This document shows positions 3,991 through 61,539 of a stretch of 64,000 nt of DNA, in pieces. Position 1 is the first letter of the stretch. Every line of letters starts with the position of its first letter. A program made the position numbers and the translations under genes. The notes beneath the pieces are model-generated. The model was not told the DNA's origin and ran no database searches. It saw only the letters and a program-made list of their open reading frames with translations. Source of the DNA: Cycas panzhihuaensis (Eukaryota > Plantae > Cycadophyta). The DNA is taken from contig CM041465.1 of assembly GCA_023213395.1 (NCBI GenBank), positions 180,427,741-180,491,740 on the forward strand. The letters are read 5' to 3'.

Positions 3991-4259
3991 TGTGGCCATT
4001 AAAATAGGTCAACCATAGAAACTAAGGAATACTCAATCAAGTAGAGGGGACCTATCTTCAAGACTACACATAAGGTGCCTTGAAAAGAGGTTCAAAGATG
4101 AATATTTAATTAAATAACCAATGATATCAAGTTATAATGGTCCATACATATATATACATATATGATGACCTTATATGAAAACGTATGACCCATCGACATA
4201 CCCTTTCCTAATTAAATAATTATTTATTAAAGTAAAGATACTTGATTAGGCATATAATA
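3991..4259 (-). repeat. 3' LTR of element A
   Basis: Aligns end to end with 42324-42600 (shared aggtcaaccata.aaactaaggaatactc, aatgatatcaagttataatgg, ccttatatgaaa..gtatgacccatc). Confidence 0.88.
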
Positions 4260-4269
4260 ATACTGCCCT

Positions 4270-22767: not shown

Positions 22768-24572
22768 GCTGATCAAGATTCCACTCCAAAGGTTGAAGAA
22801 ATCATTGTTATACATGGTGATCAAGAAATTATATAGGATAATAATGACAAGCAAGTTATATTTAAAGATGGTTACTTACAAGATCTACATCAAAATCAGA
22901 CTAGATCAACCACAATGAAGAATTGGGATTTACACTTTCTAGAGTTGCTACAACAAAAGTATCAGTATAGAATTGAAGATGAAAATCAAGTTGAAGACAC
23001 CATTCTATAACAAAGACATCACTACAAGATTGAAGACAAGGATTAAGTTGAAGACATCATCTTCAAGACATTTCTAAGGATAAGGAATTGCAAATACAGA
23101 TAACCTAAATGTACATTAAGGGGGAGTGTTGGAATATTACTAATGTATATATGTTTTATCCCACATGCAAATGGGTCCCACTCTCACTATCATGTCATGT
23201 ATTATAAATACACACATAGTGTATCATATGAAGTATTTATTGTAAGGATGTTTTGAATGATATTAATACAATTTGAGGTACCTTAGGGGTATCATTCAAT
23301 CCTAAAGGTGTTTTTGTTTTGTTTTGCAAATATTATCTTATTGTAGGTTATGTTTTCTAATTAGTACGATTGTAGTTACAACAATGCTAACTAGGAGATT
23401 TAAAAAAAAGGGAAGAAAAATTAATTATAAAATTTCAAGAAATTTCTACCCATTCTAATGTTGGCCTATTTAAGATCATTAGGGCATTAAACTATCTTAA
23501 CTTAACTGTGAATTGGGGTTTGATCAAGGATCTATTTACTTAGAAAGTTCATGTAGGGCATCCCCCCTAAAATTATTTGCAAAGTGATTATTAACCATTA
23601 TTTTTACTATGTCAAATTATGCACCTATAGTGCTAACGTTTATTTAGAGGTGATCCTCCATTAGTAACTACCTATAGATCCCCTCACTATCTAACACCTA
23701 CCCTCTATAGGCTCTTCTACTAGTAGTTTTCTTTCTAGTTGCCTAGCCATTTACTAACTTGCAAAAGGTTGCCCTTGCCAATATATAACCCATAATCCTT
23801 ATACTAGCCTAATAACTTCATCATGCAATGTGTTTCCAAATAATAGTCCCACTTGATCATTGTTATAGTAGATGGCTTAGTTTATCATGGTAGCCTTTCC
23901 AGAGGCCTATTTTCATCCATTTCCTACATGAAAATACTAAGAGATAACTTGTATAAACTACCTAAGCTTTCCTAGTAGTTTGATCCTTACGACTTGGTTC
24001 TTAGGTCTTGTGTCATCTCACTTTATTAAATAATACTTTTATTTATTAGTTAACCTAGTCCCCTATAAGTTGGCTTATTACCATGGCATCTTTTCATACC
24101 CAAAAAATAAAATAGATATGAATACAAAAAAAAATTATGTATATATACACCCCCTATAAGAAAATGGATATAAAATAAAAAAATACAAAAAAAGTATTAT
24201 AAATTTGTACATAGACCTCTTTTCAACTTCTTAGCATCTAGGGAAAGCCACATGTTAGCTTTGCTTCCACCTATAATTCACAATTTAGGTCTAGATGTGT
24301 GGGTCATTTAGGAATTTTAGATCTGGTTGTTTGGGTCCACTATGGCCTTAATCATAATTGAAACCTACTTGACGCTTTGAGAGATAAAAATATATTTTTA
24401 AAATTTACTATGATAATGATATTAAGCCACTTATGGCAACTTTTTTTCAACCTATTTTGTAAATAGAGTGAGCATACAAACTTAAGACATAACCATGTTC
24501 AATTCCTACCTAATTCCCTTTATTCATTAATTTATCTCTGTGTTACTATTGTATTATCCCATAGTATTAATC

Positions 24573-26097: not shown

Positions 26098-29000
26098 TGT
26101 TCCCTGTAGTCAGGGAGCTTCATAGTAATTGCACCAATAGGTAAATTAGAGTATGTATTTCTCACTTTCTAACTTAGTTTAATTTACCTTAGATTAGTTA
26201 TTTTATAAGCATATGTTATTATTTTCTTGTTGATATATTAGACAAATGTGCCTGTTTTAGTTTATGATGATTTTGACTATGGTTGGTAGCTTCGTAGTTG
26301 TCCATTTGAGTTGAGTAAGTTAAAGAAAAGCCTCTTAGTACCTCTACAAGACACATCTCACCCTTCTTGTCCTTATCTTTATAGTATTACTCTATCTGGC
26401 TTCTTTGTTTAGACCTCTATTTCTTCAAAATCAATGTTTTTTTGTGCTTTTTTCATCCATTCTACCATGATTATTATTATCTCACTTTAATTCATGTTTT
26501 TGCATTTATAAAAATGTGATTTTTATGGTACCATGAAGTTCACCATAATACCACTTTGAAAATTTGTGGTACCACTTCAAACTTTACAGTATCAATTCTT
26601 TTACTTAATTTTTTTTTTTTTGCTTACAATTGATTGCATATTTATGGTACCTACCTTTGGGCCCATCCACTTATTTCATTAAAAATATAAGCCACCCATT
26701 GATTTTTATTTAATACCATGGATACATTAATACCTCTAACATTAATGCCCCACAAAACCATAGGTAATTATCCCATGGTATTCCCCTAATCTATGGGCCC
26801 AAAACCATGGGCCCTTTCCCTTCTAGTTTTCTATATATATGCCTTCTTTTCATTGAAAAAGGAGGTCAATTTCTAAGTTGTTATATTGCAAAATCTAGCT
26901 AGAATTCCCATTTGCATATAAACCTAATTATTGGATTCCTCACTTAGCTTGGAGATTGAAGGCTAACCAATTTTGGATCACTCTTGACTGAAGTTGATTA
27001 TCATTAACATCTCACCTTTGTTGAGAACTAGGGTAATCCCCTCTTAATGCTAGAATTTTCACCTTCTTATTAAGTGCTTTTCAAAATTTTCTAGCATTTA
27101 ATTACTATTATTTTATGCTTTTTATTAAGCTTAATTTTAGTTATTTTTCCCTTGAATGATTCACTCTTCCATGCATTAGTATCTTACAGAGAGAAATAAG
27201 GTTTACTATTGCTTACTAAGCTTAGAAAAAGGTGGTAGTGCTACTATTTCCCACGCTCTCTTTATGCTTCCTTACTATTTGTTTAAGCTTACATTTTAAT
27301 CTTTTTAAAATAGTCTTTTCATCAGAAATTTTCCTATATATTTGCATGTAAACTAACTTAAAATAAGTGGAGCAACACTTTACATATTTATCATAGGTTA
27401 GAGAAGTACTTAAAAATAGTCAGAGGAGTCCTCTTCTTCCCCCTCATCCTCTTTTCCTAACTAATAAGGTGCTTGTCGCATAGTTATTATGCTATCAAAA
27501 TTTTATCAGAAAGTATAAAAAAGGTTAGTATTCCAAGTTGGTTTTAAAGTGATCTTTAGCACATTTGATTTTCCAAATAAGTTTTTTTATTATCATAGGT
27601 CAATCCAACAAGTAGAAATGCTACTGAATTTTTCCTAGAAATCAATCATATTTATATGCTTAACTAATCCCATTTTGAGCCTATTGGCTTAGAGAGCTAA
27701 AAGTTACTTGGAAAAAGGGTTTGAATTGAATATTTAACACATTATTCTAGGTATTCTTCCAACCCTCCCTCCATAGATTCAATTTCAAAGAAAAATGCTT
27801 AAAAGTATATTTTTATTTCATAAGTTTATTTAAAAACAAAAAGGCAGGAAAGAGTAGCTTGTTTGTCACTTGTTCACCACTATTTGTCTCTTCCCTACCT
27901 CTCATGTGTGTATACTTTTGGTTTCAAAATGAGAAGGAATCTCTTTTATCTGCATTATATTGCATTGTATTTCTTATGCCTATTAGTTTAGTCATTTTGG
28001 TAAGTGCCTTTGAAGGCCATAACAGGGAAGAGGGTCATACCTATTACGAGTCCTTGAACTCATGGGGCCTATAAACTTGTTTGTTAGGTTAGATTTTCTT
28101 ATTTGACATTCAAATTTAAATTGCATATTAGTTATATTTAGCATGTGTTGATTTTTTCTTAAAATTTTAAGGTTTTGTTGTCCCTTTTTGTCCTAAAGAA
28201 GGAGGGGGGGATGGGCACTACTATAATTTCTTTACTTAGATTTCATCAACAAATAAGAGGTATAGTCTTATGCCTTTAGGTGCATCATGTTCTCTATATC
28301 TATATTCTTAATGAGCTAGTGAAGGATTTCTATCCTCACCATGTTCTTATGCATGGGGTATGGATAACCGAGTGAACTTCATTCATCTCATTGAGAGTAA
28401 TATCTTCTTCCATTTCACTACTTCAGAGCTTGAGGTTTGTTGGAATTAGATGTAGGCAATGCCAAGCCATCTTATAATCCTATGGGTTGGGTTGCCAATA
28501 TTGATAAGTCCCCATCAACTTATTTAGAAACAAATCTATCTTATGGTCTTGATTTCTTTAGACCTCTTACTTTGGGCAATCCTTTCACCCATTCTCATTT
28601 ATCGAGTTTGTTATTTTAGAGTCATGTAAAAGTCTAAGTTAAGTTAGGCTAGTCAACTTGGGTGGGTTTAGTTAATTAGGATAGGCACATAGTTGAGTAG
28701 GAGTTTGGATCCTTTTTATTTGATTGAACCCCCTCACATCGTTAGGGCTTTTTGTATGCTATTTGGTCCTTTTAAATATGTTGATTATTTATTTGATTAA
28801 TATTATATTAAGCTTTGTAGTTAGTTTGTAATTCAATTTTTTGGTTGGTACACTATTGTCTCATTTGCCTGTTTGCATTATACATTTTAATTATTAGTTA
28901 GTTTCGGTTTTCCTTTTAATTTCTCTTTTATTTTTCTCTTTCTTTGGCACATCACATACATCTACATATTACTTTTAGTCAACCTAATAGTCATATAATC

Positions 29001-29149
29001 TATTGTCCCTATACCTAGGTACAAGAGATGTATGAGCACTCCATGGAGGGTATATGCTTATGCCTCTCTCTATTTAGATCCCTCCTTGCCCTTCAGGTCG
29101 ATCTTAGGTTTGTGTTTATATGTCTTATCCTCTCTCTTATCCACTTTCA
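26098..29149 (+). repeat. 3' LTR of element C (3052 bp)
   Basis: tgttccc...actttca termini. Continuous similarity to 5231-7336 and 14656-15200. Confidence 0.88.
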
Positions 29150-29154
29150 TCCTA

Positions 29155-32100
29155 AAAAGTAAGCATATTTAGTTATTCTATTTATGACCAAAAAAACATT
29201 CTCTTCTTGTAATTTTATGAGCCTGATTATAAAATCGATTACTATTTATTTCCACTTCTCATTTGGTACATGCAAGAGTTGTAGAAGGATAAGAGTGACT
29301 GCATTCTCTTTTTTATAAGGTTAATATAAATCACATCCTACTACAAATTGTTAGATGTCTTGCTTTAGTCCTTTCTAGTAGAAGGATCAACATACCATAA
29401 GATAGGTTTTAAAGAATCCATCTATGGCTTATTATGGGTACTAAATAACAATCTTTCAAAATTAATTTTTTGTGCTTAGATATTAGAGTTAGGTAAATGT
29501 GTCCTTTGGACTAGAGGATATCACTCTTCTATTCATATTTATCTCTTATATACAATGTTTCTTCCTGTAGCTTCACTATGATCTCTTAAGTTTCCTTAGA
29601 TTTTGTATACTTAACTTGGATATCATTGATCTAGGTTGGAATAATAATAGTAGCAGAATATAAAATGGATTCTTCATCTCTTCTAGATTGTGCATTAGCC
29701 ACCTTGTTTTCCTTCCCTTTCTTATAAAAGATCTCAAAGTTAAATGCCTAAATATTAGTAACCCACTTTTTTATTCAAGGGCTAATATTTTTTAGTGTAG
29801 GATGTATTTTAGATTATCATGATCTATTTGTACTAGAAACTTACTTTCTAATAGGTATTGCTTCTATTTTATTAATTTATACATTGTTGCTAGCATTTCC
29901 TTATTATAAGTGGATTTTAATATTTTCTTCTTTCGAATGCAATTGGGTAATTTTCCTACATGAGGATGGTCCCTATTCCATTTTTAGATGCATTGTATTC
30001 TAAAGTGAAGGGTTTCAAGAAATTGGGTATGGTTAGTACTAGTGTAATCATCATGCATTATTTTAAGTTTTGGAAGCTTTGTTATGCCTCATTATTCCAT
30101 AGGAATGGTTCCCTTTTTAATAGGTTAGTTAAGGGGGTCATGATATGGGTATAAATTTTAATAAATGTTCTATAGTAACCTATTAATTCTAAGAATCCTT
30201 ATAATTTGCATATACATTTTGGGGTTGACTAGTCTAGAATAGCTTTGATTTTTCTTGGATCCATTTTTACTCCTTTAGATGATATAATATATCCTGAGGA
30301 TTCTATCTCTTATTTCCCAAATATACATTATGATTTCTTAGCATAGAACTGATTTTTTCTTAAAGTCTTCAAAACCTTCTCGACATGTAATAGGTGCTCA
30401 TCCTAAGTATGACTATATACTAAAATATCATCAAAGAAGATGAATACAAATTTTCTTAACCATGGTTGAAAGGTTTTGTTCATGACTTCTTGAAATGTTG
30501 TTGGGGTATTTATCAAGCTAAAGGGCATGGCATTGAATTTATAATGACCCATATGAGTATAAAATATTATTTTGGGAATATCTTTAATACAAATAAATAT
30601 TTGATAATATTTAGATCATAAATCTAGTGAAATATTTAGCTCCATGAAGTTCATCTAAGAGTTTATTAAATCTTTTTTTTTGGTAAGATAAAATGAATTA
30701 AAGTGGGTTTGAAAACAGGCTCCCACAACCTAGTACATCAACAATAGTAGACTGCATAATCAGTATTATCCGTGACAACCCCACGGAATAGGAAAAAGAA
30801 ACTAGAGTGCCGGGACAAGCCCCACGGCTAGCTGTTGCAGATCAAATCCTTGTCAACCAGAGTCAGAAGATCCCTAGGAAAATCATCTCTCCATACTTGA
30901 CTAGTCTTGTTCCTCACCCCCCAATTAGCCAAGAAGTCTGCAGCTTTGTTGCCTTCTCTCAGAGTGTGTCCGACATGCATATCCGCAAACCTTTGATAAT
31001 CTCTTGCGTATCTTTGATTATGTCTTGATATCTCCAATCTGGAAGAGCCTCACCTTTTAACGAATTTAAAACCACTTTAGAGTCCCCCTCAAGCACCAAC
31101 CTCTGGATAACCCCTATACGGGCTAAGTCGAGGGCTTTTAGCATGGCATGCATTTCTGCATAGTTGTTCATTTGACTCTCATAGTAGTCTGTAAAGGCCC
31201 AGATGAGGGAGCCCTTGCAATCCCTACAGATTCCCCAACCCCCAGCTTCACCAAGGTTCCCTTTCGCTGCCCCATCAAAATTTATTTTGAGCCAGGGCTC
31301 CTCTGGAGGGATCCATCTAATGCTTCTGGGCTTGGGGACCACGAATTCAGGTACTATGCCCCATTTGAGCAAGATCCTACTCTCTGACGGGGATATGTGC
31401 TTTTCTTTGGCCTTACCAACGTTTTCCTTAATGTCCGAGCAAATTCTACTGTAGATAGCCATATGGTCCTTATTTTTTCCCTAGAAGATCCTGCTGTTCC
31501 TTTCTTTCTAGATATTCCAAGCCAAAATCAGGAGCATATTCTTCCAGATACGGCTGAGAATGTTACTTTTGAATAGGCTTTGCCAGGTGAGCCAGAGGTC
31601 AGCTGGTTTGTGCGAAAATGTCCAGCACACTTCCAGCTTCCCGAGCAACAGCCTCCAGACTTCCCTTGCGAAGGGGCACTCTAGGATGATATGATCAATG
31701 GATTCCTCTCCTTTACAGTATAAAATGCATCTGTTGGCCATTAGAAAACCTCTCTTTTATAGGTTGTCTATAGTGAGAATTTTGTTCTTAAGACAGGTCC
31801 ACCAGAAGAGAGTTATTTTCAGAATAAGGGGGAGCCTCCAAACACCTTCCAACAGCGGGTCTTTTTTGTCCCCTCTTTTCAACCATAAGTACTGGTAACC
31901 CTGTTGCACTGTGTACTCTCCAGATGAGCTCGAGGGCCACACCATTGAGTCCTGCGAAGGGGTTCTAGAGATATAGCTCTTCCCTAGGATCCTTCTGATC
32001 TTATTAATACCCTCCTGCATGCTACCTATCCCATGGATATCCTCAAAATTCCTCCAGGACCTGCTCCCCTCTCTCCCCGACCAATAATCTTTAATCATTT

Positions 32101-35100
32101 TGCCATATTGCCTAACGCAGGGACCCATTAAAGGTATTAGGTTAGGAAACTCCTTCAAATGCTTCTCACAGCACCACGCGTCCTCCCAAAATCTGATGGA
32201 ATTATCATCTCCTAGTCTCCATTTTAAGCCATCTCTGATAGCTCCCCAAGCTTTAATGATACTCCTCCAGATGGTAGAGCCAACCAAGGATAAGCTGCTA
32301 TCCAAAAGGGAGCCCCCCTGTATGTATTTTCTAGAAAGGATCCTCTCCCAAAGTCTATCCCCCCCTTTGAGTAGTCTCCACCCAAGCTTTGCCCCCAGGG
32401 TGATATTAAAGAGAGGGGGCCTTCGTAGATTGAGGCCACTAGCCCATTTTGGGGAACAAACTTTGCTCCAACTTACCAAATGAATCCTGTATTTTGTTTC
32501 AGTCCTAGACCAAAAACATCTTTTCTGAATTGATTCGATGATGTCCGAGATACCAGGCGGAACCCTAAAGATGGACATCTAAAACACTGGAATGCTTTGA
32601 AGGGTAGAAGCTACTAGCTGGAGTTTTCCAGCTAGACTCAGGAGGGCACCTTTCTAACCTGCTAACTTTCTTTGCCTCCTATCTATAAGAGGGTTCCACA
32701 TATCTTTGGGCATCTTGCCAACAAAAAGGGGCAAACCTAGGTAGATTGTAGGGAGCTTTTTGATATCCATCCCAAGGATTCTGCTTATCCTACCTTGGGT
32801 GTGTCCTGGAGTGTTTAAGAAAAAGACATTACTCTTCCTGAGGCTTATCTTCTGGTTCGTGGCCTTCTAAAAAAGCCCCAGATCTCTTTAAATCTAGAGG
32901 CCTCCCTTACAGACGCTTTCCCAAGAAAGATGTTGTCATCTACAAATTGGTGGTGTACCACATTATCCACCCCCGATGTCAGTTTGATGCCATTTAAGAA
33001 CCCACGCCTCCTAGCAGACTCTAGGGTTCTGCCCAGCAGATCAGCCATCGTGATGAATAGAAAGGGAGAAAGGGGATCTCCTTGTCTCAGCCCCCTATGT
33101 CCGGGAAAAAACCTGGAGGATGAACCATTAATAATGACAGAAAATTGGGGATTGCCAATACACAACTTGATCTAGGACCACCATGGTTCCCCAAAGCTGA
33201 AAGCCTCTAGGCAATTCAACAGGCATTCCCAGGATACTCTATCAAAGGCCTTCGTGAGATCGATCTTGATGAGCATTGCAGGCTCCTTCCTTTCAGCAGC
33301 TGAATGGATTGTTTCATGTACAACAATATATCCATCGTAAATCTGCCTACCACGAAGGAACCCGTCCTGGTTGTGGGAGATAATATTTGGCATAATTCTC
33401 TTTAGCCTATTAACCAGGACTTTAGTTAAAATCTTGTGTTTAACATTGCAAAGACTGATTAGGCAAAACTCCTCCATCCTATTCGCTCCTTCTTTTTTAG
33501 GGATGAGGACAAGGAATGTAGTCTGCCATTCCTGGAGCATCTTATTGTTTGCATAGAACTCCTGCAAAGCTTCCATTAAATCTCCTTTAATAATATCCCA
33601 ATACTCCTGGAAGAAGCCCGAAGGAAAGCCATCAGGGCCAGGAGCTTTATCCTTTTTCATACCAAAGAGGGCCGTCCTGACCTCCTCCAATGTGAACGGC
33701 GCAGTCAGCTACATGTTTTGAGCTTCATTCACTAACCTGGGTATATTGTTTAGAAAGTCTCTTCTACTATCCATATCCCCATCTTAGGGTTCAGTGAATA
33801 GATCCTTGAAGTAATCACTGGCTAACTCCTTCATTTCTTCAGTCGAGCTAACCACAGAACCATCTTCCTTTTGAAGACTAGAAATTCTATTACTGGCTCT
33901 ATGTTTAACTGCAGTCATGTAAAAAAATTTTGTATTCCTATCACCTTCTGCCAACCAAAGAGCCCTGGATTTCTGTCTCTAGTGGATTTCTTCTCTGATG
34001 AGGGTCTCATCTAGTTTCTCCACCAATTACTTTTCGGTCTTATTTAGCTCGGGGGATCTACCCGTGCATTCAATCCTATCCTCGATGTCTTTTAGATCAC
34101 TGATAGTTTTATCCTTATGCAGATGGATATTTTGGAATACCTCCTTGTTCCAAGCCTTTACTTATTTTTTAATCCATTCCAACTTCTTCAAAAATCTAAA
34201 CATTGCATGGCCCTTGATTTGGATTCTCCACCATTCCTCGACCCTGTTCCTGAGGTCTGGGTGATGAAGCCACATTAGTTCAAACCTGAAGGGGGAACCT
34301 ATGAATTTATTCGGGTCCGAAAATTGAAGCAAGAGCGGAGAATAGTCAGAGCTAATCCTTGGTAATGCCTCAAGGGTGAAGTCATTGAATCTCCTCATCC
34401 AGTCATAATTGACCAACACCCTGTCCAGTTTAATTTGAATTAGGTCATTCCCCAAATGTTTGTTTGACCATGTATACGAGGCCCCTCTAAAGAGTTTATT
34501 AAATCTTGAAAAAAGAATATATTAATAGTTATTTTGTTCAGCATATAAAAATCTATACATATACAAAGAGAATAATATATATTTTTTTTTTTGCTAAGAT
34601 TATGGGTTTTGCATATGGGCTTTTACTAGGTAATATGGTTCTAATTTTTAATAGATCATAAATAAATTTTTTTATTTCATCTTTGTGAAAATAGAGATGT
34701 TAGTATGGGTTAATATTGATTGGTTTTGACCTTTCTTGGAGTTTAATCACACATTTCATACCTCAATCAAGAGGTAGTCCCATTAGAAGATCCTTAAACA
34801 CCTCTAAGTGTTTTTGTATAATTTCTTATATATTACTCAATGAATTGTCCTCAACTTCTACTTCAAGAGAGAAACATCTAATAACAAAGTCTAGCCATCC
34901 CATTTTTAACATTTTCTCCATTTTATAAGATGTCATGAATTAAGTTTTGATCAAAATGAATCCTTGTGATGTGTAGATTTTACCCTTAGATATAAATTTT
35001 ATGAATAGCTTATCTAGGTTTAATGCAATTGCCCTAATGTTCATAGCCATTAGGCACCTAATATAATATTTACACCACCTATAAGAATTACATACATTTG

Positions 35101-35510
35101 TGACTTAAGATAATATTCTCCCATTGTTATCTCTACATTTTAACACATTCCTCCATATTTAATAAATCCTCTATATATAATAATTACTTAAAACTAATTT
35201 ATGGGATAGATATATTCTTTAACTCTTTCTATACATTACTTATAAATAAAGTTATATGTACTACTAGAGTCAATAAGTACTATTGCACTTTCCTTCTTTA
35301 TATAGCCCATAATTTTAAGAGTTTAAGGGGTTATAATTCTTATGATTATTGCCAAGGATATTCTAAGTAGGTTCTTAATGACCTCATATTCTAATTCAAC
35401 TTCATTTAGGCCTTCTTCTATTTCTATCTCATTAAATTCCACTTCCTTATTTGGATAAGGGTCCATTCCTTGTTTATCAACTAGAGCTAAGTGTTGGATT
35501 GACACCTTAA
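29155..35510 (-). pseudogene. pol: Element A pol (protease, RT, RNase H, integrase start), interrupted by the L1 at 30673-34489
   Basis: Minus strand carries ELLDELHGAKYF, THMGHYKF..MPF, FVFIFFDDILVYS and VINRITKYAYFLG. Confidence 0.9.
30673..34489 (-). mobile_element. 5'-truncated L1-clade LINE (ORF2: endonuclease end, RT, zf-RVT, RNase H)
   Basis: Poly(A) tail seen as T9 at 30673-30681. Identical 16-18 bp TSD aagagtttattaaatc(tt) at 30657 and 34490. Motifs KLDRVLVN..SDYSPLL, KAPGPDGF, GLRQGDPLSPFLF, HQFVDD, CILYCKGEESIDHIILECPF, INFDGAAKGN, EGDSKVV, HTLREGNKAADFLA. Markedly higher GC than its surroundings. Confidence 0.97.
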
Positions 35511-37254
35511 TGATATATGAAGAATGATTGATGATTATTATTGAGAGTATAAGAGTATATATACAATTATGGTTTGTAACCCTCTTTAAACTACCTTGTA
35601 ACTGGCACATTATATAATGACACATGTCCTTCGATTATAACCATAGAATTTTCTTTAGAGAGTCTAGATAAAACATTATATTCTAACACCCTCTCTTAAT
35701 GTTTTATCCTTTTAACCCTATTTTATCTTTAAGAAATTTGAATTTATCTTTTCTTAGAGGCTTTGTCAATATATCAGCCACTTGATTACCTATTGGATAG
35801 TAAACAAGATCTATCTCCTTTGTTTATACTTTTTCCTAAATAAAACAATAGTGTACTTCAATGTGCTTGGTCTTGCCATAAAGTACTTGATTTTTGGTGA
35901 GTTTGATAGCACTTTGATTATCATAATAGAGTGTAGTAGCCCCTTTTTTAGGTTCCTTCAAGTCATTTAGGAGTTGTCTTAGATATATTACTTCAACAGT
36001 TACACTGACTATTGATTTATATTCTACCTTTGTAGATGATAGTGCTACAATTACTTATTTTTTACTGCTATAAGAAATTGGGGTTGAGCTTAGAAGGAAA
36101 TAATGCCCACTAGTTGATTTCCTTTATTCCTTATCACCTACCCAATTTGAATCATAGAAACCTATCAGCTGATGAGATTTTCCCTTTAAAAGCATTAATT
36201 TTAGTTCTGATGTTCCTTTTAGATATCTCAAAATCTTCTTTGTAGCATTTGAGTGTTTTGTTCTAGGCTCATATATGTATCTTGATATCATACCTACTGC
36301 ATATGAAATATTAGGTCTAGTAGCTATGAGGTAGATGAGACTACCTACAAGTTGTATGTACAGAGTGGTATCTACACAGGATTCTTTTTTATCTAGGGTC
36401 AAGTTATAATTTACTTCTATAGGAATGGAGTAAGGATTCTATTTATCCATGTGGAACTTAATTAGTAAATCTTTAATATATTTACTTTGGCATGAGGTGA
36501 TTGAGTTGCTATGTTAATCAACTTAGATGCCCAAATAGTAATTTAGAATCCTAGATCAGTCATCCCAAACTTATTCTCCAATTAACTCTTTATATCAAAT
36601 ATTGATTCCTCATCATCACTAGTAAGGATCATATCATTAACATATACTCCTATTATGATGATTTCACCATTTCTATTTTTTACATATAGACTTGAGTTTG
36701 TGCTGCTCTTGTGAAAACTATTCTTGCAAAAATGTTTATTTAATTTTACATACTAGGCATGAGGGGTTTATTTTAGAGTATATAGTGCCTTTTTAAATTT
36801 GCAGATAAAGTGCTCTTATCCCTTCTTGATGTAACCCTCAAGTTTTAACATGTAGATTTCTTCTTCTATTTCACCATTCAAAAAGGTACTTTTGATATCT
36901 AGTTGCTATATCTTCTAATTCTTTTGTGCTGCTAGAGTTATTATTATTCTCACTATATTTAGTTTAGCCACATATGAGAAAGTTTCATTATAATCCGCTC
37001 CTATTGTTTATGTGTAGCCTTTTCCAACTGGCCTTGCTTTATATTTTTCTATCTTCCCATTAGCTTCTTCTTTAATTTTGTAGATCTATTTATAGTTTAC
37101 AATAGGCTTATTGGATGGCAGTTTAACTAGTTCCTAGGTCTGGTTCTTGATTATGGAGTCTACTTCAACATCCATGGCTTTCCTCTATTTTATGTGTTCC
37201 TTTGCTTTAATATACGATTATGGATCTATTTGATTGACCAAGGCTCTATGTTTC
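35511..37254 (-). mobile_element. Ty1/copia element 3 remnant (RT, RNase H, 178-bp 3' LTR 35511-35688) inserted in A; left-arm copy
   Basis: YIQLVGSLIYLIATRPNISYAVGMISRY..KKILRYLKGT. PPT adjacent to a tgttaga..tatca LTR. Confidence 0.92.
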
Positions 37255-37261
37255 CTTATTA

Positions 37262-39005
37262 GAAACATAGAGTCTTGAGCAATCAAATGGAGCCATAATC
37301 GTACATTAAAGCAAAGGAGCATATAAAATAGAGGAAAGCCATGGATCTTGAACTAGACTCCATAATTAAGAACCTGACCTAGGAACTAGTTAAACTGCCA
37401 TCCAATAAGCCTATTGTAAACTATAAATAGATCTACAAAATTAAAGAAGGAGCCAATGGGAAGATAGAAAAATATAAATCAAGGCCAGTTGCAAAAGGCT
37501 ACACATAAATAGTAGGAGTGGATATTAAAGAAACTTTCTCATCTGTGGATAAACTAAATACAGTGGGAATAATAATAACTCTAGCAGCACAAAATAATTA
37601 GAAGATATAGCAACTAGATATCAAAAGTACCTTTTTGAATGTTGAAATAGAAGAATAAATCTACATGTTACAACTTGAGAGTTACATCAAGCAAGGATAA
37701 GAGCACTTTATCTGTAAATTAAAAAAGGCACTATATACTCTGAAATAAACCCCTCATGCCTAGTATGCAAAATTAGATAATAATCTTTGCAAGAATATTT
37801 TTCACAAGAGCAGCACAGACTCAAGACTATATGTAAAAAATAGAAATGGTGCAATCATCATAATAGTGGTATATATTAATAATATGATCTTCACTGGTGA
37901 TGATGAGGAATCAATATTTGATATAAAGAGTTAATTAGAGAACAAGTTTGAGATGACTGATCTAGGATTCTAAATTACTATTTGGGCATCTAAGTTGATT
38001 AACAAAGTAACTCAATCACCTTATGCTAAAGTAAATATATTAACGATTTGCTAGTTAAGTTCTATATGGATAAATAGAATCCTTGCTTTGTTCCTATAGA
38101 AGTAAATTATAACTTGACCCTAGATAAAAAAGAACCCTGTGTAGATGCCACTCTGTATAAACAACTTGTAGGCAGTCTCATCTATGTCACAGCTACCAGA
38201 CCTAATATTTCATATGCAGTAGGTATGATATCAAGATACATACATGAGCCTAGAAAAAAACACTCAAATACTGTAAAGAAGATTTTGAGATATCTAAAAG
38301 GAACATCAGAACTAAAATTAATGTTTTTAAAGGGAAAATCTCATAAGCTGATAGGTTTCTATGATTCAGACTAGGCAGGTGATAAGGAATAAAGGAAATC
38401 AACTAGTGGGCATTGTTTCTTTCTAGGCTCAACCCCAATTTCCTAAAGTAGTAAAAAATAAGCAACTGTAACACTATTATCAACATAGGCAAAATATAAA
38501 TTAGTAGTCAGTGCAACTGTTGAAGCAATATGTCTAAGATAACTCTTGAATGACTTGAAGGAACCTTAAAAAGGGGCTACTACACTCTATTATGATAATC
38601 AAAGTGCTATCAATCTCACAAAAAATCTAGTACTTTATGCCAAGACCAAGCACATCGAAGTACACTATCATTTTATTTGGGAAAAAATATAAACAAAGGA
38701 GATAGATCTTGTTTACTATCCAATAGGCAATCAAGTGGCTGATATATTGACAAAGCCTCTAAGAAAAGACAAATTCAAATTTCTTAGAGATAAAATAGGG
38801 TTAAAAGGATAAAACATTAAGAGGGGGTGTTAGAATATAATGTTTTATCTAGACTCTCTAGAGAAAGTTTTATGGTTGTAATCGAAGGACACGTGTCATT
38901 ATATAATGTGCTAATTACAAGGTAGTTTAAAAAGGGTTACAAACCATAATTGTATATATACTCTTATACTCTCAATAATAATCATCAATCATTCTTCATC
39001 TATCA
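37262..39005 (+). mobile_element. Mirror copy of copia 3 remnant (RT, RNase H, PPT, LTR 38828-39005)
   Basis: YKQLVGSLIYVTATRPNISYAVG; YDNQSAI..AKTKHIEVHYHF..QVADILTKPL; PPT aagaggggg before 38828. Confidence 0.92.
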
Positions 39006-41252
39006 TTGAGGGGTCAATCCAACACTTAGCTCTAGTTGATGAACAAGGAATGGACCCTTATCCAAATAAGGAGGTGGAATTTAATGAGATAGAAATAGAA
39101 GAAGGCCTAAATGAAGTTGAATTAGAAGATGAGGTCATTAAGAACCTAGCTACAATATCCTTGGCAATAATCATAGAAATTATAACCCCTTAAACTCTTA
39201 AAATTATGGGCTATATAAAGAAGGAAAGGGCAATAGTACTTATTAACTCTGGTATACATATAACTTTATTGATAAGTAATGCATAGAAAGAGTTAAAGAA
39301 TATATCTATCCCACAAATTAGTTTCAAGTAATTATTATATATAGAGGATTTGTTAAATATGGAGGAATGTGTTAAAGAGTAGAGATAACAATGGGAGAAA
39401 ATTATCTTAAGTCACAAATATATGTAATTCTTATAGGTGGTGTAAATATTATATTAGGTACCTAATGGATATGAACATTAGGGAAATTACATTAAACCTA
39501 GATAAGTTATTCATAAAATTTATATCTAAGGGTAAAATCTACACATCACAAGGATTCATTTTGATTAAAACTTAATTCATGACATCTCATAAAATGGAAA
39601 AAATGTTAAAAATTGGATGGCTAGACTTTGTTATTAGATGTTTCTCTCTTGAAGCAGAAGTTGAGGGCAATTCAATAAGGAGTAATATATAAGAAATTAT
39701 GTAAAAATACTTAGAGGTGTTTAAGGATCTTCTAATGGGACTGCCTCTTGATTGAGGTATGAAAAGTGTGATTAAACTCCAAGAAAGGTCAAAATCAATT
39801 AATATTAACCCATACCAACATCCCTATTATCAAAATAATGAAATTAAAAAAATTATTTAGGATCTATTAAAAATTAGAACCATATTACCTAGTAAAGCCC
39901 GTATGCAAAACCCATAGTCTTAGCTAAAAAAAAAAAGATTATTCCTTTTGTATATGTGTAGATTTTTATATGCTAAACAAAATAACTATTAATATATTCC
40001 TTTTTCAAGAATTGATAAACTCTTAGATGAACTTCATAGAGCTAAATATTTCACTAGATTTATGATCTGAATACTATCAAATATGTATTTATATTGAAGA
40101 TATTCCCAAAATAATATTTTATACTCATATGGGTCATTATAAATTTAATGTCATGCCCTTTAGCTTGATAAATACCCAAACAACATTTCAAGAAGTCATG
40201 AACAAAACCTTTCAACCATGGTTAAGAAAATTTGTACTCATCTTCTTTGATGATATTTTAGTATAAAGTCATAGTTGGGATGAGAACTTATTACATGTCG
40301 AGAAGGTTTTGAAGACGTTAAGAAAAAATGAGTTCTATGCTAAGAAATCATAATGTATATTTGGGAAATAGGAGATAGAATCCTTAGGATATATTATATC
40401 AGCTAAAGGAGTACCATTCTAGACTAGTCAACCCCAAAAAGTATATGCAAATTACAAGGATTCTTAGGATTAATAGGTTACTATAGAATATTTATTAAAA
40501 ACTACACCCATATCATGACCCCCTTAACTAACCTATTAAAAGGGGAACCATTCCTATGGAATAATAAGACATAACCAAGCTTCCAAAACTTAAAATAATG
40601 CATGATGATTACACCAGTACTAACCATACCCAATTTCTTAAAACCCTTCACTTTAGAATACAATGCATCTAGAAATGGAATAGGGACCATCCTCATGTAG
40701 GAAAATTACCCAATTGCATTCTAAAGAATAAAATTAAATCAAAAGAAAATATTGAAATCCACTTATAATAAGGAAATGCTAGCAACAATGCATAAATTAA
40801 TAAAATAGGTTTCTAGTCCAAATAGATCATGATAGTCTAAAATACTTCCTATACTAAAAGATATTAACCCTTGAATAAAAAAGTGGGTTACTAAAATTTA
40901 GGCATTTAACTTTGAGATATTTTATAAGAGAGGGAAGGAAAACAAGGTGGCTAATGCACAATCTAGAAGAGATGAAGAATCCATTTTATGTTCTACTACT
41001 ATTATTATTCCAACCTAGATCAATGATATCCAAGTTAAGTATACAAAATCTAAGGAAACTTAAGAGACCATAGTGAGGCTACAAGAAGAAAGATTATATA
41101 TAAGAGATAAATATGAATAGAAGAGTGATATCCTCTAATCCAAAGGACACATTTACCTAACCCCAATATCTAAGCACAAAAAATTATTTTAAAAGAATGT
41201 TATTTAGTACCCATAATAAGTCATACATGGATTCTTTAAAACCTATGTTATG
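39006..41252 (+). pseudogene. pol: Mirror copy of element A protease-RT-RNase H-integrase start (no L1)
   Basis: VLINSGIH protease-like motif, FFDDILV RT motif, YYKRGKENKVANA. The empty L1 site lies at ~40007-40024. Confidence 0.9.
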
Positions 41253-41700
41253 TGTTCTCATTGGGATTAATTTTAAAATAAGTGTCTAGTTTACTTATCT
41301 AAATTTGGGATCATTATCAAAGTCCTTCCTGAACTTTAGAATATTAATTTTATTACAAAACTTATTTGGAATTATACCCTATGGTTTATTTGAGTTGCCC
41401 CTCTAGCATTTTGATTTTGATTGGGATTTAAACTAGTAGAAATTTTCTTAACTAACTCCTTGATTGCCTTTATAATTTCTTGGATACTTATATTATCTTT
41501 ATTAAATTCATTATTTTTCTCCTTCTATGCCTCTTCATGTTGTTGTATTATCTTCCTTAGTTTATTATTAATCATAAATATTTCATTATTTAATTTAGCA
41601 TTAAAAACCATTATTTACGCAAGAGGATTTAACACAATAATTTTTAGAAGATTATATTATAAGTTATTTGGGTGTTTTGTATTTTTGTTTTATTTTTTGA
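41253..41700 (-). pseudogene. gag: Element A gag N-terminal remnant, truncated at the palindrome boundary
   Basis: Minus strand near 41253-41340 reads DPKF/ISKLDTYFKINPMRT, a gypsy gag-type motif. It lies downstream of A's PBS. Confidence 0.6.
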
Positions 41701-41991
41701 TAGAGTGCCCCACTACTTAGTCAATATACCTTGATCCACACAGAGATCAAATGTATATGGATCTAATATAGTGAGTAATTAATATATATATTATATAAAA
41801 AGAATGGTATCAAGATATATATATTATATCTGTCCTAATTAGGTAACTCTCCTAATGTACAAAATAATGTCAAAGATGTTCAATAGTTCTAGAGATAATA
41901 TTTATGTCTATCCTAAGCAAGTTACTTTCAAAAATTAAAAATTTATCTCCATTTATTAATTATGGGTAAAAGTGAATAATTCAAAAATAAC

Positions 41992-42290
<299 letters not shown>

Positions 42291-42323: not shown

Positions 42324-42600
42324 TTTGGTGATCCAAACAGGTCAACCATAAAAACTAAGGAATACTCCACTAATTAGAGGAGGTCAATCTCTTTGTTCAC
42401 ATATGAGGTATCTTGAAAAGGGATCTGAAGATTAATATTTAATTGACTAAATAATGATATCAAGTTATAATGGCCTACATATATGTATGTGTGTGTGTGT
42501 TGGGGGTAACCTTATATGAAAGGGTATGACCCATCAACGTACCCTTTCATAATTAAACAATAATTTGTTAAGGTAAAGGCACTTGATTTGGTACATAAAA
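42324..42600 (-). repeat. 5' LTR of element A
   Basis: Matches 3991-4259. PBS at 42310-42321. TSD ATCTT follows. Confidence 0.88.
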
Positions 42601-43374
42601 ATCTTACTAAACCTATCCACAACTATAAACAAGTAATCATGGCCCTTCTTTATCATTGATAATCCTCTAACAAAATCCATGGATATGCCCTCCCATGGTC
42701 TATTGGGTACTTGCAATGGCATATATAACCAAAGTTTCTTATTGATAAGCTTATTTATACTATAAAATATACATTGTCTAATGAATTTAGAGACTTGCTC
42801 TTACATTTTGGGCTAATAGGCATACCTTTATAAATTGGCTACTATATTTCAAATATCACAATGTTTAAATTTTTTTATGAATGTGCTTATTTAATGAGTT
42901 GAACTCTTGATCCTTATGGTATATACAACTTGCCCAATGTATAAATTAGCCCATCTTAGAGATAGAAATCAACCTTGTCATCTAAATATACATTCAAATT
43001 ACGCTTTAATTTTTCATATACCTCTTTAAAATCTATATCTTTTGAGTATTATTCTTTATATACCTCATGGGTAAATGGAACATGCTTCATTATGGTACTT
43101 ATGGCTAAAATCTTTGATATTAGAGGCCTAGAGAACATGTTATCTACCTTGTTCATGATGCCCTTCTTATATTTTATTACTAAATGGAAATATTGCAAAA
43201 CTTCCATCCATCTAAAATGCCTTACCTACTGTAATTTTATTTGAGTCTAGATATACTATAAGTTCTAGTGATTAGTGTGGATAATTACAATGATCCTTTC
43301 ATCCAATAGTTTGGCTTTTCTTTTTAATACTATTATAAGTCTTCTAGTTGTTTATGTAATAGTGAATAACTTTT

Positions 43375-43376: not shown

Positions 43377-45490
<2,114 letters not shown>

Positions 45491-48400
45491 TTCTCTAAAT
45501 GTATGGTTTGCTTTATAGTGTACATAAATACAATTGCAAAATAAAAAGAACAAGTGTAGAAATAAAAGGAACAAAAGAAATAGTTTTTGTTTATTTAATT
45601 ATCACATAGCATTATCCTTTATATCACATATAATTTGTTTGTAGAATAAAAGGTGGTATATATATGTAGAAATTCTAGTATAGGTTTTGCTACGACAAGA
45701 GGAGGAATTAACCAATCATTAGATATCTATATTTAATAGGATTTAACCACCTCACCCTCAACACTGATGTCTCTAACTAGGTTTTTCCCCCTCACACATG
45801 ATATCTCCATGCCACAGTAGGTTTCCCCCCTCATCCATGGTGCTATCAATGTAAGAACTGGGCTTTTCCCCCTCATCCATGATGCTACAAAGTCTGAATA
45901 TTCAATATAATAACCTAACTCCTCCCCTTCTCTTCTATTTCTAGAATACATATATGTGTTGAATATGTCAAGGGTTGTAACTAGTCCTTTATATTATATC
46001 CTTTTAGAAATAATTTTAGTTAATCTTTCATTAACATTAATTTGGTCATAAATCTTTCTTTTCTTTCCTTCATAGGGAGTTAAGAACATGACAATTCTCT
46101 TCCCTTGGTTACAACTATTCTTAGTAGTCATTTAGTTTCTCTATATCATAAAGGTACAAACATGGTCAATAAATAATTCAAGATATTACTTTTGAATAAA
46201 AGTTTTCCTTTCTTATGTTACATTATTTTTTTCACAAGATGTTCATTTAATTTCAATTTCAAAAATTATTTTATTTCTCAGTTTCTTAATTTTCTATCTA
46301 TTTTTTTAGTTTAGGTTTTAATAAGAACTCGCATTTAGGTTCTATAGTTATTTCATTCCATTGAATCAATTAGTTTTTATCAAGTTTGTGTTTTTTTAGT
46401 AGGCTTATAGGAAATACTCTAGATTTTTTATTAATCACTTTATGCAAGTTTGTAGGCTAGATTCCCTACTTATTTGAATATTTTAAAAAGGGCATAATAT
46501 CTAAGAGTCAGTTTATCATATTTCTCAAATCTTAGAGATTTTTTTAAAGGTTTGACTAAGATAAAGACTTTACCTCCCACTTGAAATTCTTTAACAAAAT
46601 ATTTCAAATTAATAAAATTCTTATATTAATCTTGGGTGACCTTCAAGTTATGTTTAGCTTTGTAAATGATTTCCTCAATTTCCACTAAATCTTCATTACA
46701 ATACTATTTTTAATGTATAGGATTAGACTAAGAAAGAGGTTTATTATGAAATTTTCTATAAATGGCTTCAAAGGGTGACATTTTAATAGAGGAATGATAC
46801 CTTTGATTATATGTAAATTCCACTACATCTAAATAGTCTTCCTAATAAAAAGGTATTTTTGTAGTATATATTCTAAGCATATCTTCTACTACTTTACTCA
46901 TTCTGGCTAGTCATCCATCTCAGGGTGATAGGTAGAACTTATTTTAAGAATAGTTATTATTTTATTAAAAAAAAACTCAAAACTAGAAGTAAATTTTGGG
47001 TTTGTATAAGATATAATGGTCTTAGGTATCCCATGTAACTAAATATTTCTTTCACAAATATGCACGCTATATCTTTTCCAGTGGAATTAATTTTAGTGGG
47101 CATGAAATGTGCCATTTTAGTTAGTCTATCTACTACAACTAAGATAATATCATGGCCTCTCAAATTTTAGAGTAAACCAATGATAAAATCCATGGTCATT
47201 AACTTCCATTTCCATCCAAGAATGTCTAGTGGTTGTAATAGTCATGGGGTTCTACTTTGTTTTGCCTAAACTTTTTTGATATAAAATATATTTTTAAATA
47301 TATAGTTATATATCTAGTTTTATTTTAGGCTATAAAACACTTTCCTAAGGGTTAGGTAGGTTTTATAGAATCTTAGATATCTAACTATAAGTATATCATG
47401 GGCATCCTTTAGGATTTCATCTTTTATTTTAGGGGTATTAAGTATGCATAATCATCCTTCATAATAAAGCAATGCATTATCTAATAAGACATATTTTTCT
47501 ATTTTCTCCTTACGATGAATATAGCATTGAGGGTTTTGGAGTTGGGAGGGAACCAATTTAAAATATACATCCTTAATCAAGAAATTTCTGATAGAATCAT
47601 TCAAGCTCATCTTTATGAAGGATAACACATTAATATAACTTTTTTTTTTTTTTTTACTAAGGGCATTTTCTACCTTATTTTTTCCCTTAGGCATATACTA
47701 GATATCAAAATCATATTTTATAATTAATTGCATTTAATCCCTATGTCTTATGTTTAGTCATGGTTGTTTAAATACATATTGTAGACTATGATGATTTATT
47801 TTAAGGGTAAATATCACTCCTAATAAATAATTTCATTGAACCTTTAAGGCACATACTATGCTTAGTAATTCTAAATCATGAGTCAAATAATTTCTTTTAG
47901 CATTTTGTAATTTTCTCAATTCATAACTTATATACCTCTTGTATTGCATTGGAACTCCTCCTAATTCATCTCTACTAGTGTTAGTGATTACTAATTAAGT
48001 TTTGTTTGAATCAAATATGATTAACACATGTATTATTATTAATGATTTTTTTAATCTGTAAAAGGCTTCTTCATATGTTGATGCCCATGTAAATGTTTTA
48101 TCCTTTTGGGTTAGGTTGGTTAATGGTATATCAATTTTAGTTTATCCTTTAATGAATTTGGATAAAATTTTGATAAACCTAAGAAGTTCCACACTTCATA
48201 TGTATCTTTTGGTTATGACCATTCTTGTATAACTTTTATCTTTTTAAGGTCAAGGGTGATTCCTTTTTTTGAAATGATGTGTCCTAGATATGGAATCTTT
48301 GTTTAGAAAAAAATATATTTACCATTTTGGCATATACTTTATGCTCTTTTATTTTTTAAAGTACCTTTCAAATATGTTGTTCATGTTATATTTTCATTTT

Positions 48401-49376
48401 TGAATATGTTAAGATATCATCTAGAAATATAATCATAAATATATCTAAATAGGATTAGAATATATTATTTATTAGGGTCATGAAAGTGGTTGATGTAATA
48501 ATTAGTCCAAAAGATAAAATAATACATTCATAATGGCCATACCTAGTATGAAAAGAAGTTTTAGGTATATATCCTTACTTAATTATGATTTGATAGTATC
48601 CTAATAGTGAATCTATCTTAGAGAAGTTTTTAAGACCATTTAATTGATCTAAATATCATCAATCCTTGGTAACAAGTATTTATTTTTTAATTATCAATTT
48701 GTTAAGTTATTAGTAATCAATGTATAATATTAAGATGCCACTTTTCTTTTTAAAAAATAATACTGGTACTCCCAATGGAGAAATACTGGGTCTAATCTTA
48801 CCTTATTCTATTAATTATTGTAATTATTCTTTAAGCTTAGTTAATTCTAAAATGGACTATCTATATAAGGTCTTTGACACTAGTTCTACTCCAAGTATAA
48901 GATTTATTACATGTTCCATAACTCCTTTTAGAGGTAGTTCTTTGATTTTTGAAGGGAATGTATCCTTGAATTCTTTAGTAATTGGATGGCCAATAGAATC
49001 ATGATTATGTGTTTGGGTGTTTTCGATTACTAATACATTAAAAAGTTTACATGTTTTATGACCACATTTTTTAGTCTATGTTATAAAAAGGGTATGTAAT
49101 TATGTGGGTGTCTCCTTCCCTTGAATAATCCTAACTCTATCAAGATGTTTAGTTATTTTAACCTATTTATTGTCGTAACCAACATATACACTATTAGGTA
49201 CTAACTAAACCATACCTATTATAATATTATATTTTCCTAGATCTAATACTTTGAAATCTCTAAATGTTTCATACTTATCTATATAAAATCTTAATTCCTC
49301 TAAAATAGAATTAGTTTGCTTAAGAGTGTCATTGTTATCCAATTCTACAGATGACAATGATGTTTATGTAGTTATC

Positions 49377-61534: not shown

Positions 61535-61539
61535 TGTCT

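What the first reader, a model, noticed from the sequence alone, without database searches (positions are those of the whole stretch)
29396..41252. Giant fold-back palindrome (~4 kb arms, 7-nt loop) built from a copia+gypsy composite
Seen: 37262-41252 is the reverse complement of 29396-37254 once the L1 is removed. The centre is ctctatgtttc-CTTATTA-gaaacatagag. Both arms carry the same copia-LTR/gypsy junction and the same inactivating stops (e.g. catgccTAGtatg), so one already dead composite was copied; these are not two insertions. The arms differ by ~5% (9/178 in the LTR) plus small arm-specific deletions (~40413, ~40808, ~29930). The structure is therefore old and not a read or assembly fold-back. 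Known: near-spacerless multi-kb palindromes are unstable (cruciforms, breakage). Inference: it is unusual for one to persist this long with its centre intact.
Basis: partly seen in the sequence, partly recalled or inferred. Interest (0 to 1): 0.85.

Follow-up and report, generated by a model that had tools for sequence, protein, structure and literature searches.

The report
Old fold-back duplication of dead retrotransposons
A 4-kb piece of already-dead nested plant retrotransposons was copied backwards right next to itself millions of years ago, leaving a real, near-spacerless but decayed palindrome: a tidy fossil of a known DNA-repair accident, with no sign of a new kind of element.

Summary
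Window 37262-41252 is the reverse complement of 29396-30674 plus 34508-37254, around a 7-nt centre (37255-37261).

The left arm alone carries a 3.8-kb 5'-truncated L1-type LINE with a 19/20-nt target-site duplication. The right arm keeps the empty site.

Each arm is the 3' part of a copia element (RT to 3' LTR) nested in a Ty3/gypsy pol. Both arms have the same LTR/gypsy junction and 12 shared in-frame stops, so one dead composite was copied once.

The gypsy integrase reading frame continues about 81 codons past 29396. The left arm is therefore parental, and the right arm is a copy joined at 41252 to unrelated AT-rich DNA.

Differences are scattered and transition-rich, with no gene-conversion tracts. 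K2P is 0.068, roughly 2.6-4.9 My at angiosperm rates.

This rules out a read or assembly fold-back. Public reads (short contigs only) did not bridge the centre.

Best reading: a fold-back-primed inverted duplication with deletion, now a neutral relic. Hairpin-siRNA function is untested. The kind is known (plant long inverted repeats, fold-back inversions), so interest is modest.

The parts
29153..29419 (-). Ty3/gypsy integrase (H2C2 zinc finger to start of the catalytic core). It crosses the outer end of the left arm (29396) and continues about 81 codons into the left flank.
   Evidence: tblastn with gypsy polyproteins P0139 and P0113 gives E 8e-14 and 1e-12 on the local subject and a colinear chain.
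29396..30674 (-). Left arm, outer segment: degenerate gypsy RT, RNase H and start of integrase.
   Evidence: One fragment carries the ..YYQI..FFDDILVYS motif. A Pfam RVT_1 hit (6.6e-8) came from the fragment set.
30656..30674 (.). Target-site duplication of the LINE, copy 1 (19 nt).
   Evidence: compared.
30675..34487 (-). 5'-truncated L1-type LINE. It inserted after the duplication and is in the left arm only. A short A-tail reads as a T run at 30675-30681.
   Evidence: Pfam RVT_1 1.9e-17, zf-RVT, RVT_3/RNase H. Boundaries.
34488..34507 (.). Target-site duplication of the LINE, copy 2 (20 nt, one indel against copy 1).
34508..35481 (-). Left arm: gypsy protease and N-terminal RT, up to the point where the copia element is nested.
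   Evidence: tblastn places the protease at 35442->35032 and RT at 34822->34473.
35482..35687 (-). Copia 3' LTR (about 206 nt, TG..CA) in the left arm, preceded by the polypurine tract.
   Evidence: There are only two copies in the window, 94.7% identical.
35707..37254 (-). Left arm, inner segment: degenerate copia pol from about the start of RT to the stop codon.
   Evidence: Fragments with ..YVNDM.. and ..ADILTKPL... A Pfam RVT_2 hit (1.8e-8) came from the fragment set.
37255..37261 (.). 7-nt centre (loop) of the palindrome, CTTATTA.
37262..41252 (+). Right arm (3991 nt): the derived inverted copy, running copia pol, copia LTR (38829-39034), then gypsy protease, RT and RNase H.
40007..40025 (.). 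Unoccupied LINE target site in the right arm (a single copy of the TSD sequence).
41253..41990 (.). Unrelated AT-rich right flank, joined to the copy at 41252/41253. It has no homology to the left flank or to either TE.

Best explanation
This is a genuine, ancient inverted duplication made in one DNA-level event, not a mobile element and not two insertions.

The starting locus held a Ty3/gypsy element on the minus strand, with a copia element nested between its gag and protease. Both were already riddled with stop codons.

A break or stalled fork inside the copia RT region left a 3' end that folded back on its own strand, leaving a 7-nt loop. That end primed synthesis outward for about 4.0 kb, through the copia 3' LTR and into gypsy protease, RT and RNase H.

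The newly made end was then joined, at 41252/41253, to unrelated DNA. The 5' half of copia and the 5' part of gypsy were lost, giving an inverted duplication with deletion.

Afterwards the two arms decayed independently by methylation-type C-to-T mutation and small deletions. An L1-type LINE landed in the parental arm.

The structure most likely has no function. It survives because it sits in silent TE DNA and because early mismatches close to the centre damp cruciform extrusion.

Shown here: the structure, its single origin, which arm is parental, the order of events and the lack of gene conversion. Inferred: the break, the fold-back priming and the end joining.
For: Structure and symmetry.

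Single origin from a dead composite: the same LTR/gypsy junction in both arms and 12 shared in-frame stops.

Polarity: the gypsy integrase frame runs 29419->29153, across the left-arm end at 29396. Nothing homologous follows 41252.

Deletion: there is no copia 5' LTR or 5' half anywhere in the window.

Later LINE insertion: TSD and A-tail in the left arm, empty site in the right arm.

Independent decay: 177 transitions against 80 transversions, and CpG observed/expected of 0.06-0.09. The longest identical run is 74 nt against 74.7 expected for scattered differences.

Not a third direct copy, so not an ODIRA-type triplication.

Precedent: fold-back inverted duplications form with 2-8 bp of inverted microhomology, and 4-6 bp suffices in yeast (PMC3907307).
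Against: No read or contig bridges the centre. Depth in bin 37179-37375 is 0.39, 44, 0 and 5.96 in the four runs. Independent physical confirmation is therefore missing.

The ancestral copia sequence to the right of the centre is unknown. The short inverted microhomology that the model needs cannot be shown.

The 41252 junction may be secondary, made by a later deletion, rather than the original join.

Human constitutional fold-back duplications have kb-scale spacers, not 7 nt (PMC3907307).

The mutation rate of this species is unknown, so the 2.6-4.9 My date is only indicative.
Confidence: 0.7

Rival explanations
1. Hairpin-RNA (Mu killer-like) silencer. Read-through transcription across both arms would give a long hairpin RNA. 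Dicer would cut it into siRNAs that silence both the copia and the gypsy family in trans, and the locus would be retained for that reason.
For: The structure meets the criteria for a plant long inverted repeat (PMC8728187). Mu killer is a natural inverted duplication of part of a TE that acts this way through a roughly 4-kb hairpin (PMC3440606). Perfect duplex runs of up to 74 bp remain between the arms. Both TE families are high-copy in related samples, with contig depth up to about 71,000 over the copia LTR region. Another first-stage note proposed this reading (s1-819655).
Against: No RNA run holds the stretch. The two copia LTRs point outward, so their transcripts would both be gypsy-sense and not complementary (anatomy). 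The arms drift apart at a neutral-looking rate with no conversion or constraint. A 3.8-kb LINE interrupts one arm. The copied TE was already dead. No flanking gene or promoter was identified.
Confidence: 0.12
2. Two-step origin. Either a direct duplication of the composite was followed by inversion of one copy, or ectopic recombination brought two paralogous copies head to head.
For: The end product would also be two diverged inverted copies. TE-rich regions rearrange often.
Against: It needs independent breakpoints that coincide to within 7 nt at the centre. No trace of a direct-repeat stage or a second inversion breakpoint is seen. A single fold-back event explains every junction.
Confidence: 0.07
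3. Sequencing or assembly artefact: a chimeric fold-back read (missed hairpin adapter) or an inverted mis-join of haplotypes or paralogues.
For: No contig of the public runs bridges the centre. Fold-back chimeras are a known long-read artefact (own knowledge).
Against: Artefactual fold-backs have identical arms. Here there are 257 substitutions with a biological spectrum, 9 indels and a LINE with a TSD in one arm only. A haplotype mis-join would extend the homology into both flanks, but it stops at 29396/41252. One contig of organism B covers 41223-41344 across the outer junction, which is weak support with about 30 nt on the arm side.
Confidence: 0.05
4. A mobile foldback-type transposon, or another element with long terminal inverted repeats, inserted as a unit.
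For: Other first-stage notes report foldback-like TE structures elsewhere in this genome (unchecked).
Against: No target-site duplication flanks the unit. The left arm is continuous with the gypsy integrase in its flank. The centre bin has very low depth in related samples while the TE bodies are high-copy.
Confidence: 0.02

Closest known systems
Fold-back inverted duplications after a double-strand break (yeast and CHO cell models; human inv-dup-del, Hermetz et al. 2014, PMC3907307)
   Same: An inverted copy lies directly beside the parental segment, separated by a short unique loop. One side is continuous with the parental flank. Sequence distal to the break is lost, and the far end is joined to unrelated DNA.
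   Different: The copy is only 4 kb and interstitial, not a chromosome-arm-scale duplication with a dicentric intermediate. The spacer is 7 nt against 766-70,466 bp in the human cases. It resembles the short-inverted-repeat events in yeast more closely. The microhomology could not be checked.
Plant long inverted repeats (LIRs) catalogued in LIRBase (PMC8728187)
   Same: Arms exceed 400 nt, with at least 80% matches and at most 10% indels. The repeat is TE-derived. It could in principle be a source of hairpin RNA.
   Different: According to the paper, many LIRs are two adjacent independent TE copies on opposite strands, with loops of up to 100 kb. This one is a true duplication of a composite with a 7-nt loop. 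No expression data exist for it.
Mu killer of maize (PMC3440606)
   Same: A natural inverted duplication of part of a transposon, with arms of a few kb.
   Different: Mu killer copies part of an active DNA transposon and is transcribed from a flanking gene. Here the template was dead retrotransposon DNA and no read-through promoter or RNA is known.
Sex-chromosome ampliconic palindromes of primates (own knowledge)
   Same: Multi-kb inverted arms persisting for millions of years.
   Different: Those have kb-scale spacers, carry genes and are kept above 99.9% identical by arm-to-arm gene conversion. Here the arms are 93.5% identical and show no conversion tracts.

Membership tests
Fold-back inverted duplication (DSB or fork, intrastrand priming) | Inverted copy immediately adjacent to the parental segment with a short unique spacer | tested here: met
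   7-nt spacer between 4.0-kb arms.
Fold-back inverted duplication (DSB or fork, intrastrand priming) | One arm continuous with the parental flank, the other ending at a novel junction | tested here: met
   The gypsy integrase frame crosses 29396 into the left flank. The right arm ends at 41252 against unrelated DNA.
Fold-back inverted duplication (DSB or fork, intrastrand priming) | Short inverted microhomology in the ancestral sequence at the loop boundary | not testable with these tools
   The window holds no other copy of this copia family, so the pre-event sequence beyond the centre is unknown.
Fold-back inverted duplication (DSB or fork, intrastrand priming) | Loss of sequence distal to the break | tested here: inconclusive
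   The copia 5' half, its 5' LTR and the gypsy 5' part are absent from the window. The pre-event state is not known, however.
Long inverted repeat / hairpin-RNA locus (LIRBase definition) | Arms over 400 nt, at least 80% matches, at most 10% indels | tested here: met
   4.0-kb arms, 93.5% identity, 74 gap columns in 4046. The left arm is interrupted by a 3.8-kb LINE.
Long inverted repeat / hairpin-RNA locus (LIRBase definition) | Transcribed into a hairpin RNA and processed into siRNAs that map to the arms | not testable with these tools
   No RNA run holds the stretch.
Mu killer-like TE silencer | Inverted duplication of part of an active element, with read-through from a flanking promoter | tested here: not met
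   The template already carried 12 shared in-frame stops. The LTR promoters face outward and no flanking gene was seen. Whether read-through transcription occurs was not tested.
Mobile foldback / long-TIR transposon | Inserted as a unit with a target-site duplication, and multi-copy | tested here: not met
   No TSD at 29396/41252. The left arm is continuous with its flank. The centre is low-depth in related samples.
Conversion-maintained ampliconic palindrome | Arms homogenised by gene conversion (over 99% identity, long identical tracts) | tested here: not met
   93.5% identity. The longest identical run is 74 nt against 74.7 expected by chance.
Read or assembly fold-back chimera | Arms identical apart from random sequencing error, with no arm-specific biological events | tested here: not met
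   257 substitutions at a transition:transversion ratio of 2.2, 9 indels, and a LINE with a TSD in one arm only.

The most novel reading that the evidence does not exclude
This locus may be one dated example of a recurrent class in this large plant genome. In that class, kb-scale, near-spacerless palindromes would arise from retrotransposon DNA by fold-back repair and be tolerated for millions of years. Some could act as double-headed hairpin-siRNA sources against high-copy copia and gypsy families. Unchecked first-stage notes list other TE palindromes on the same chromosome, for example s1-824891 with 3.3-kb copia arms and a 130-bp spacer.
Probability: 0.15. Interest if true: 0.6.

Novelty: new member of a known kind. 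Interest (0 to 1): 0.3.

Why it matters
The locus is a clean natural fossil of a fold-back inverted duplication in a plant. Both junctions are preserved, the parental arm is identified, and the order of events is clear: TE death, then duplication, then LINE insertion.

A rough date can be attached. There is also direct evidence that the arms never exchanged sequence.

It shows that a multi-kb palindrome with a 7-nt spacer can survive for millions of years in plant TE DNA. That is useful as a calibration point for studies of inverted-repeat fragility, which rest mostly on yeast, mouse transgenes and human disease loci.

It does not reveal a new mechanism or a new element.

Tried and rejected
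1. Public reads. The best holders share only 0.18-0.29 of the words. All are short Logan contigs from three coded related organisms, and no RNA run holds the stretch. When laid on 35800-41700, no piece bridged the centre. One 122-nt contig of organism B crosses 41252 with about 30 nt on the arm side. This neither confirms nor refutes the centre.

2. Pfam on ATG-ORFs and on the ten longest stop-to-stop fragments of the arms gave nothing. The RT signals sat in shorter fragments.

3. Excess mismatches next to the centre, as a possible signature of stabilisation: none found (P about 0.2). The inner 1.5 kb is more diverged (8.1% against 5.3%), but this is largely a G+C effect (P = 0.06).

4. Gene conversion between the arms: none.

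5. A third, direct copy after 41252 (inverted triplication), or inverted homology between the two outer flanks: none.

6. The minus-strand gypsy RNase H/integrase fragment at 42603-43243 as part of the event: rejected. It has the wrong strand for an extension of the right arm and no DNA similarity to the arms.

7. A whole-unit TSD: none.

8. A literature search for stably inherited T-DNA palindromes in plants gave nothing directly usable.

Full report
OBSERVATION

The inverted repeat is real and lies at the stated coordinates. The repeat finder reports a 1993-nt core pair, 35262-37254 and 37262-39254, with 7 nt between the arms, plus colinear outer blocks. blastn joins them into two segments:
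- right 40027..37262 matches left 34486..37254 at 92.7%;
- right 41252..40007 matches left 29396..30674 at 90.3% including gaps.

The centre reads ctctatgtttc-CTTATTA-gaaacatagag.

I removed the insertion and one copy of its target-site duplication and aligned the arms globally. They are 4027 and 3991 nt long, with 3715 matches and 257 mismatches (93.5% identity). Divergence is therefore 6.5% (K2P 0.068) rather than about 5%. The central 199 nt fold as a DNA hairpin at -80.1 kcal/mol, z = -20 against shuffles.

ANATOMY

The window is AT-rich plant TE DNA at about 30% G+C. It has no long ORF outside low-complexity runs.

The left-arm insertion, 30675-34487, is a 5'-truncated L1-type LINE on the minus strand. 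Pfam finds RVT_1 at 1.9e-17, zf-RVT and RVT_3/RNase H. It has a short A-tail and a 19/20-nt target-site duplication at 30656-30674 and 34488-34507. The right arm keeps the single empty site at 40007-40025. The LINE therefore arrived after the duplication.

Reading the left arm on the minus strand from the centre outward gives this order:
- degenerate copia RT (..YVNDM..) and the copia pol C-terminus (..ADILTKPL.., stop at 35707);
- a polypurine tract and a copia 3' LTR of about 206 nt, TG..CA, at 35687->35482;
- without a break, gypsy protease (35442->35032) and gypsy RT (34822->34473);
- the LINE, then more gypsy RT (30654->29935) and RNase H (29920->29610).

The composite is thus a copia element nested in a Ty3/gypsy element in the same orientation. 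The LTR/gypsy junction (..caatccaaca|cttagctc..) is identical in both arms, and the arm alignment crosses it unbroken.

ONE COPYING OF A DEAD TEMPLATE

In the gypsy RT-RNase H frame, 7 of 10 stop codons are shared by both arms at aligned positions. In the copia RT frame, 5 of 6 are shared. The composite was therefore a pseudogene before it was duplicated. These are not two independent insertions.

WHICH ARM IS PARENTAL

tblastn with gypsy polyproteins recovered from the 70-aa RT fragment shows the integrase continuing on the minus strand from 29419 to 29153. This covers the H2C2 zinc finger and the start of the catalytic core. It runs about 81 codons beyond the arm end at 29396 (E 8e-14 and 1e-12).

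Beyond the right arm end (41252) nothing homologous follows, either to the left flank or to gypsy on the plus strand. The left arm with its flank is therefore the original, and the right arm is the copy.

The copia LTR occurs only twice in the window, once per arm. The copia 5' half and the gypsy 5' part are absent. This fits an inverted duplication that replaced a deleted segment, as another first-stage note also proposed (s1-819746). No third direct copy follows the inverted one, so this is not an ODIRA-type triplication. No target-site duplication brackets the whole unit.

EVOLUTION SINCE THE EVENT

The differences comprise 177 transitions and 80 transversions. CpG is almost gone, at 5 and 8 observed against about 86 and 89 expected. 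This is the pattern of long-methylated TE DNA.

Differences are scattered. The longest identical run is 74 nt against a simulated mean of 74.7, so there has been no arm-to-arm gene conversion. Mismatches are not enriched next to the centre; the first lie 12, 17, 18, 28 and 31 nt out (P about 0.2).

K2P of 0.068 gives 2.6 My at 1.3e-8 substitutions per site per year and 4.9 My at 7e-9. Both rates are from my own knowledge of grass LTR and Arabidopsis estimates. The rate for this species is unknown.

ARTEFACT?

A chimeric fold-back read would give identical arms. An inverted haplotype mis-join would carry the homology into both flanks. Neither fits the 257 biologically patterned substitutions, the 9 indels, the one-arm LINE with its TSD, or the sharp end of homology at 29396/41252.

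Independent physical support is weak, however. The public runs that share words with the stretch are low-coverage DNA sets from three coded related organisms, held only as short contigs, and there is no RNA run. When laid at 95% likeness, the TE bodies show very high summed depth (up to about 71,000 over the copia LTR region), so these are high-copy families. The centre bin has depths of 0.39, 44, 0 and 5.96, and no listed piece bridges it.

One 122-nt contig of organism B covers 41223-41344 across the outer junction.

MECHANISM

The most economical account is a single fold-back event, in these steps:
- a break or stalled fork occurs in the copia RT region;
- the end is resected;
- the 3' end anneals within its own strand at a short inverted repeat, leaving a 7-nt loop;
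- about 4 kb of synthesis runs back along the parental arm;
- the extended end is joined to the other, degraded, side.

Fold-back inverted duplications of this logic are documented in human constitutional rearrangements. There the spacers are 766-70,466 bp, with 2-8 bp of inverted microhomology. The same paper notes that 4-6 bp suffices in yeast (PMC3907307).

The steps shown here are the product structure, the polarity, the loss of distal sequence and the order of events. The break, the priming and the joining are inferred. The microhomology cannot be checked without the ancestral copia sequence.

A perfect (TA)115 tract lies 740 bp to the right (41995-42224), and a 1.9-kb imperfect (TA)n tract lies further on (43377-45311). 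Such tracts are prone to forming secondary structure and could have contributed to fork stalling. This is speculation.

PERSISTENCE

In yeast, widening an Alu inverted-repeat spacer from 12 to 20 bp cuts recombination about 40-fold. Divergence reduces it exponentially, and a single mismatch near the centre of symmetry already lowers it (PMC10164571). Here three mismatches lie within 18 nt of the loop and the arms differ by 6.5%.

The critical period was the time just after formation, when the arms were identical. Nothing in the sequence speaks to that period.

Long inverted repeats are abundant in plants. LIRBase lists 1,731,978 in 139 genomes, many formed by adjacent TEs on opposite strands (PMC8728187). 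It allows loops of up to 100 kb and gives no count of near-spacerless cases.

First-stage notes on the same chromosome mention other kb-scale TE palindromes. They are unchecked, so they serve only as a lead that the class may be recurrent.

FUNCTION

A Mu killer-like hairpin-siRNA role (PMC3440606; note s1-819655) is not excluded but has no support. The two copia LTRs point away from the centre and would give non-complementary gypsy-sense transcripts. No flanking gene was found. One arm is interrupted by a LINE. The arms drift neutrally, and no RNA data were available.

VERDICT

This is a real, old, single-event fold-back inverted duplication of a dead nested copia-in-gypsy fragment. It was later hit by a LINE and has decayed without conversion. 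It is a new member of a known kind (fold-back inversion, plant long inverted repeat). It is notable for its 7-nt spacer, its resolvable history and its age, but it is not a new type of element or mechanism.

Noticed in passing
window 41995-42275 and 43377-45311: A perfect (TA)115 microsatellite is followed by a (CA)n run, and 1.1 kb further on lies a 1.9-kb imperfect (TA)n tract (87% matches). Both are self-complementary and produce long spurious ORFs of up to 521 aa. They lie 0.7 and 2.1 kb from the palindrome's outer junction.
   Followed up: partly
window 42335-43243 (minus strand) and 3167-5249: A separate gypsy RNase H/integrase fragment sits just right of the palindrome. Its 42335-42602 part is 76% identical to 4002-4261, beside another gypsy integrase remnant. 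This is a second gypsy family, unrelated at the DNA level to the one in the arms.
   Followed up: partly
window 46434-49303 (minus strand): A further degenerate Ty3/gypsy element with colinear protease, RT, RNase H and integrase matches (tblastn). Another RT fragment lies at 61525-62106.
   Followed up: no
window 5292-7239 / 26159-28141; 10802-14588 / 53103-57202; 14652-15165 / 28592-29114: Pairs of direct repeats at only 74-77% identity. They are probably old copies of the same TE families scattered through the window. The gypsy integrase of the parental arm ends at about 29153, next to one of them.
   Followed up: no
window 18463-18872 / 20325-20726 and 18076-18311 / 23125-23360: Two pairs of short direct repeats: 410 nt at 94%, 1.9 kb apart, and 236 nt at 91%, 5 kb apart. 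They could be LTR pairs of small nested elements.
   Followed up: no
window 38755-38951 (copia PPT/LTR region of the right arm): Summed contig depth of 11,000-71,000 in four low-coverage DNA runs of three related organisms. This copia LTR family is therefore extremely abundant in the relatives, while the palindrome centre is at or near single-copy depth.
   Followed up: partly
window 29396-41252, both arms: Extreme CpG depletion, at 5 and 8 CpG against about 86-89 expected. There is also a slight asymmetry: the left arm holds T/A where the right holds C/G at 102 sites, against 75 the other way.
   Followed up: partly
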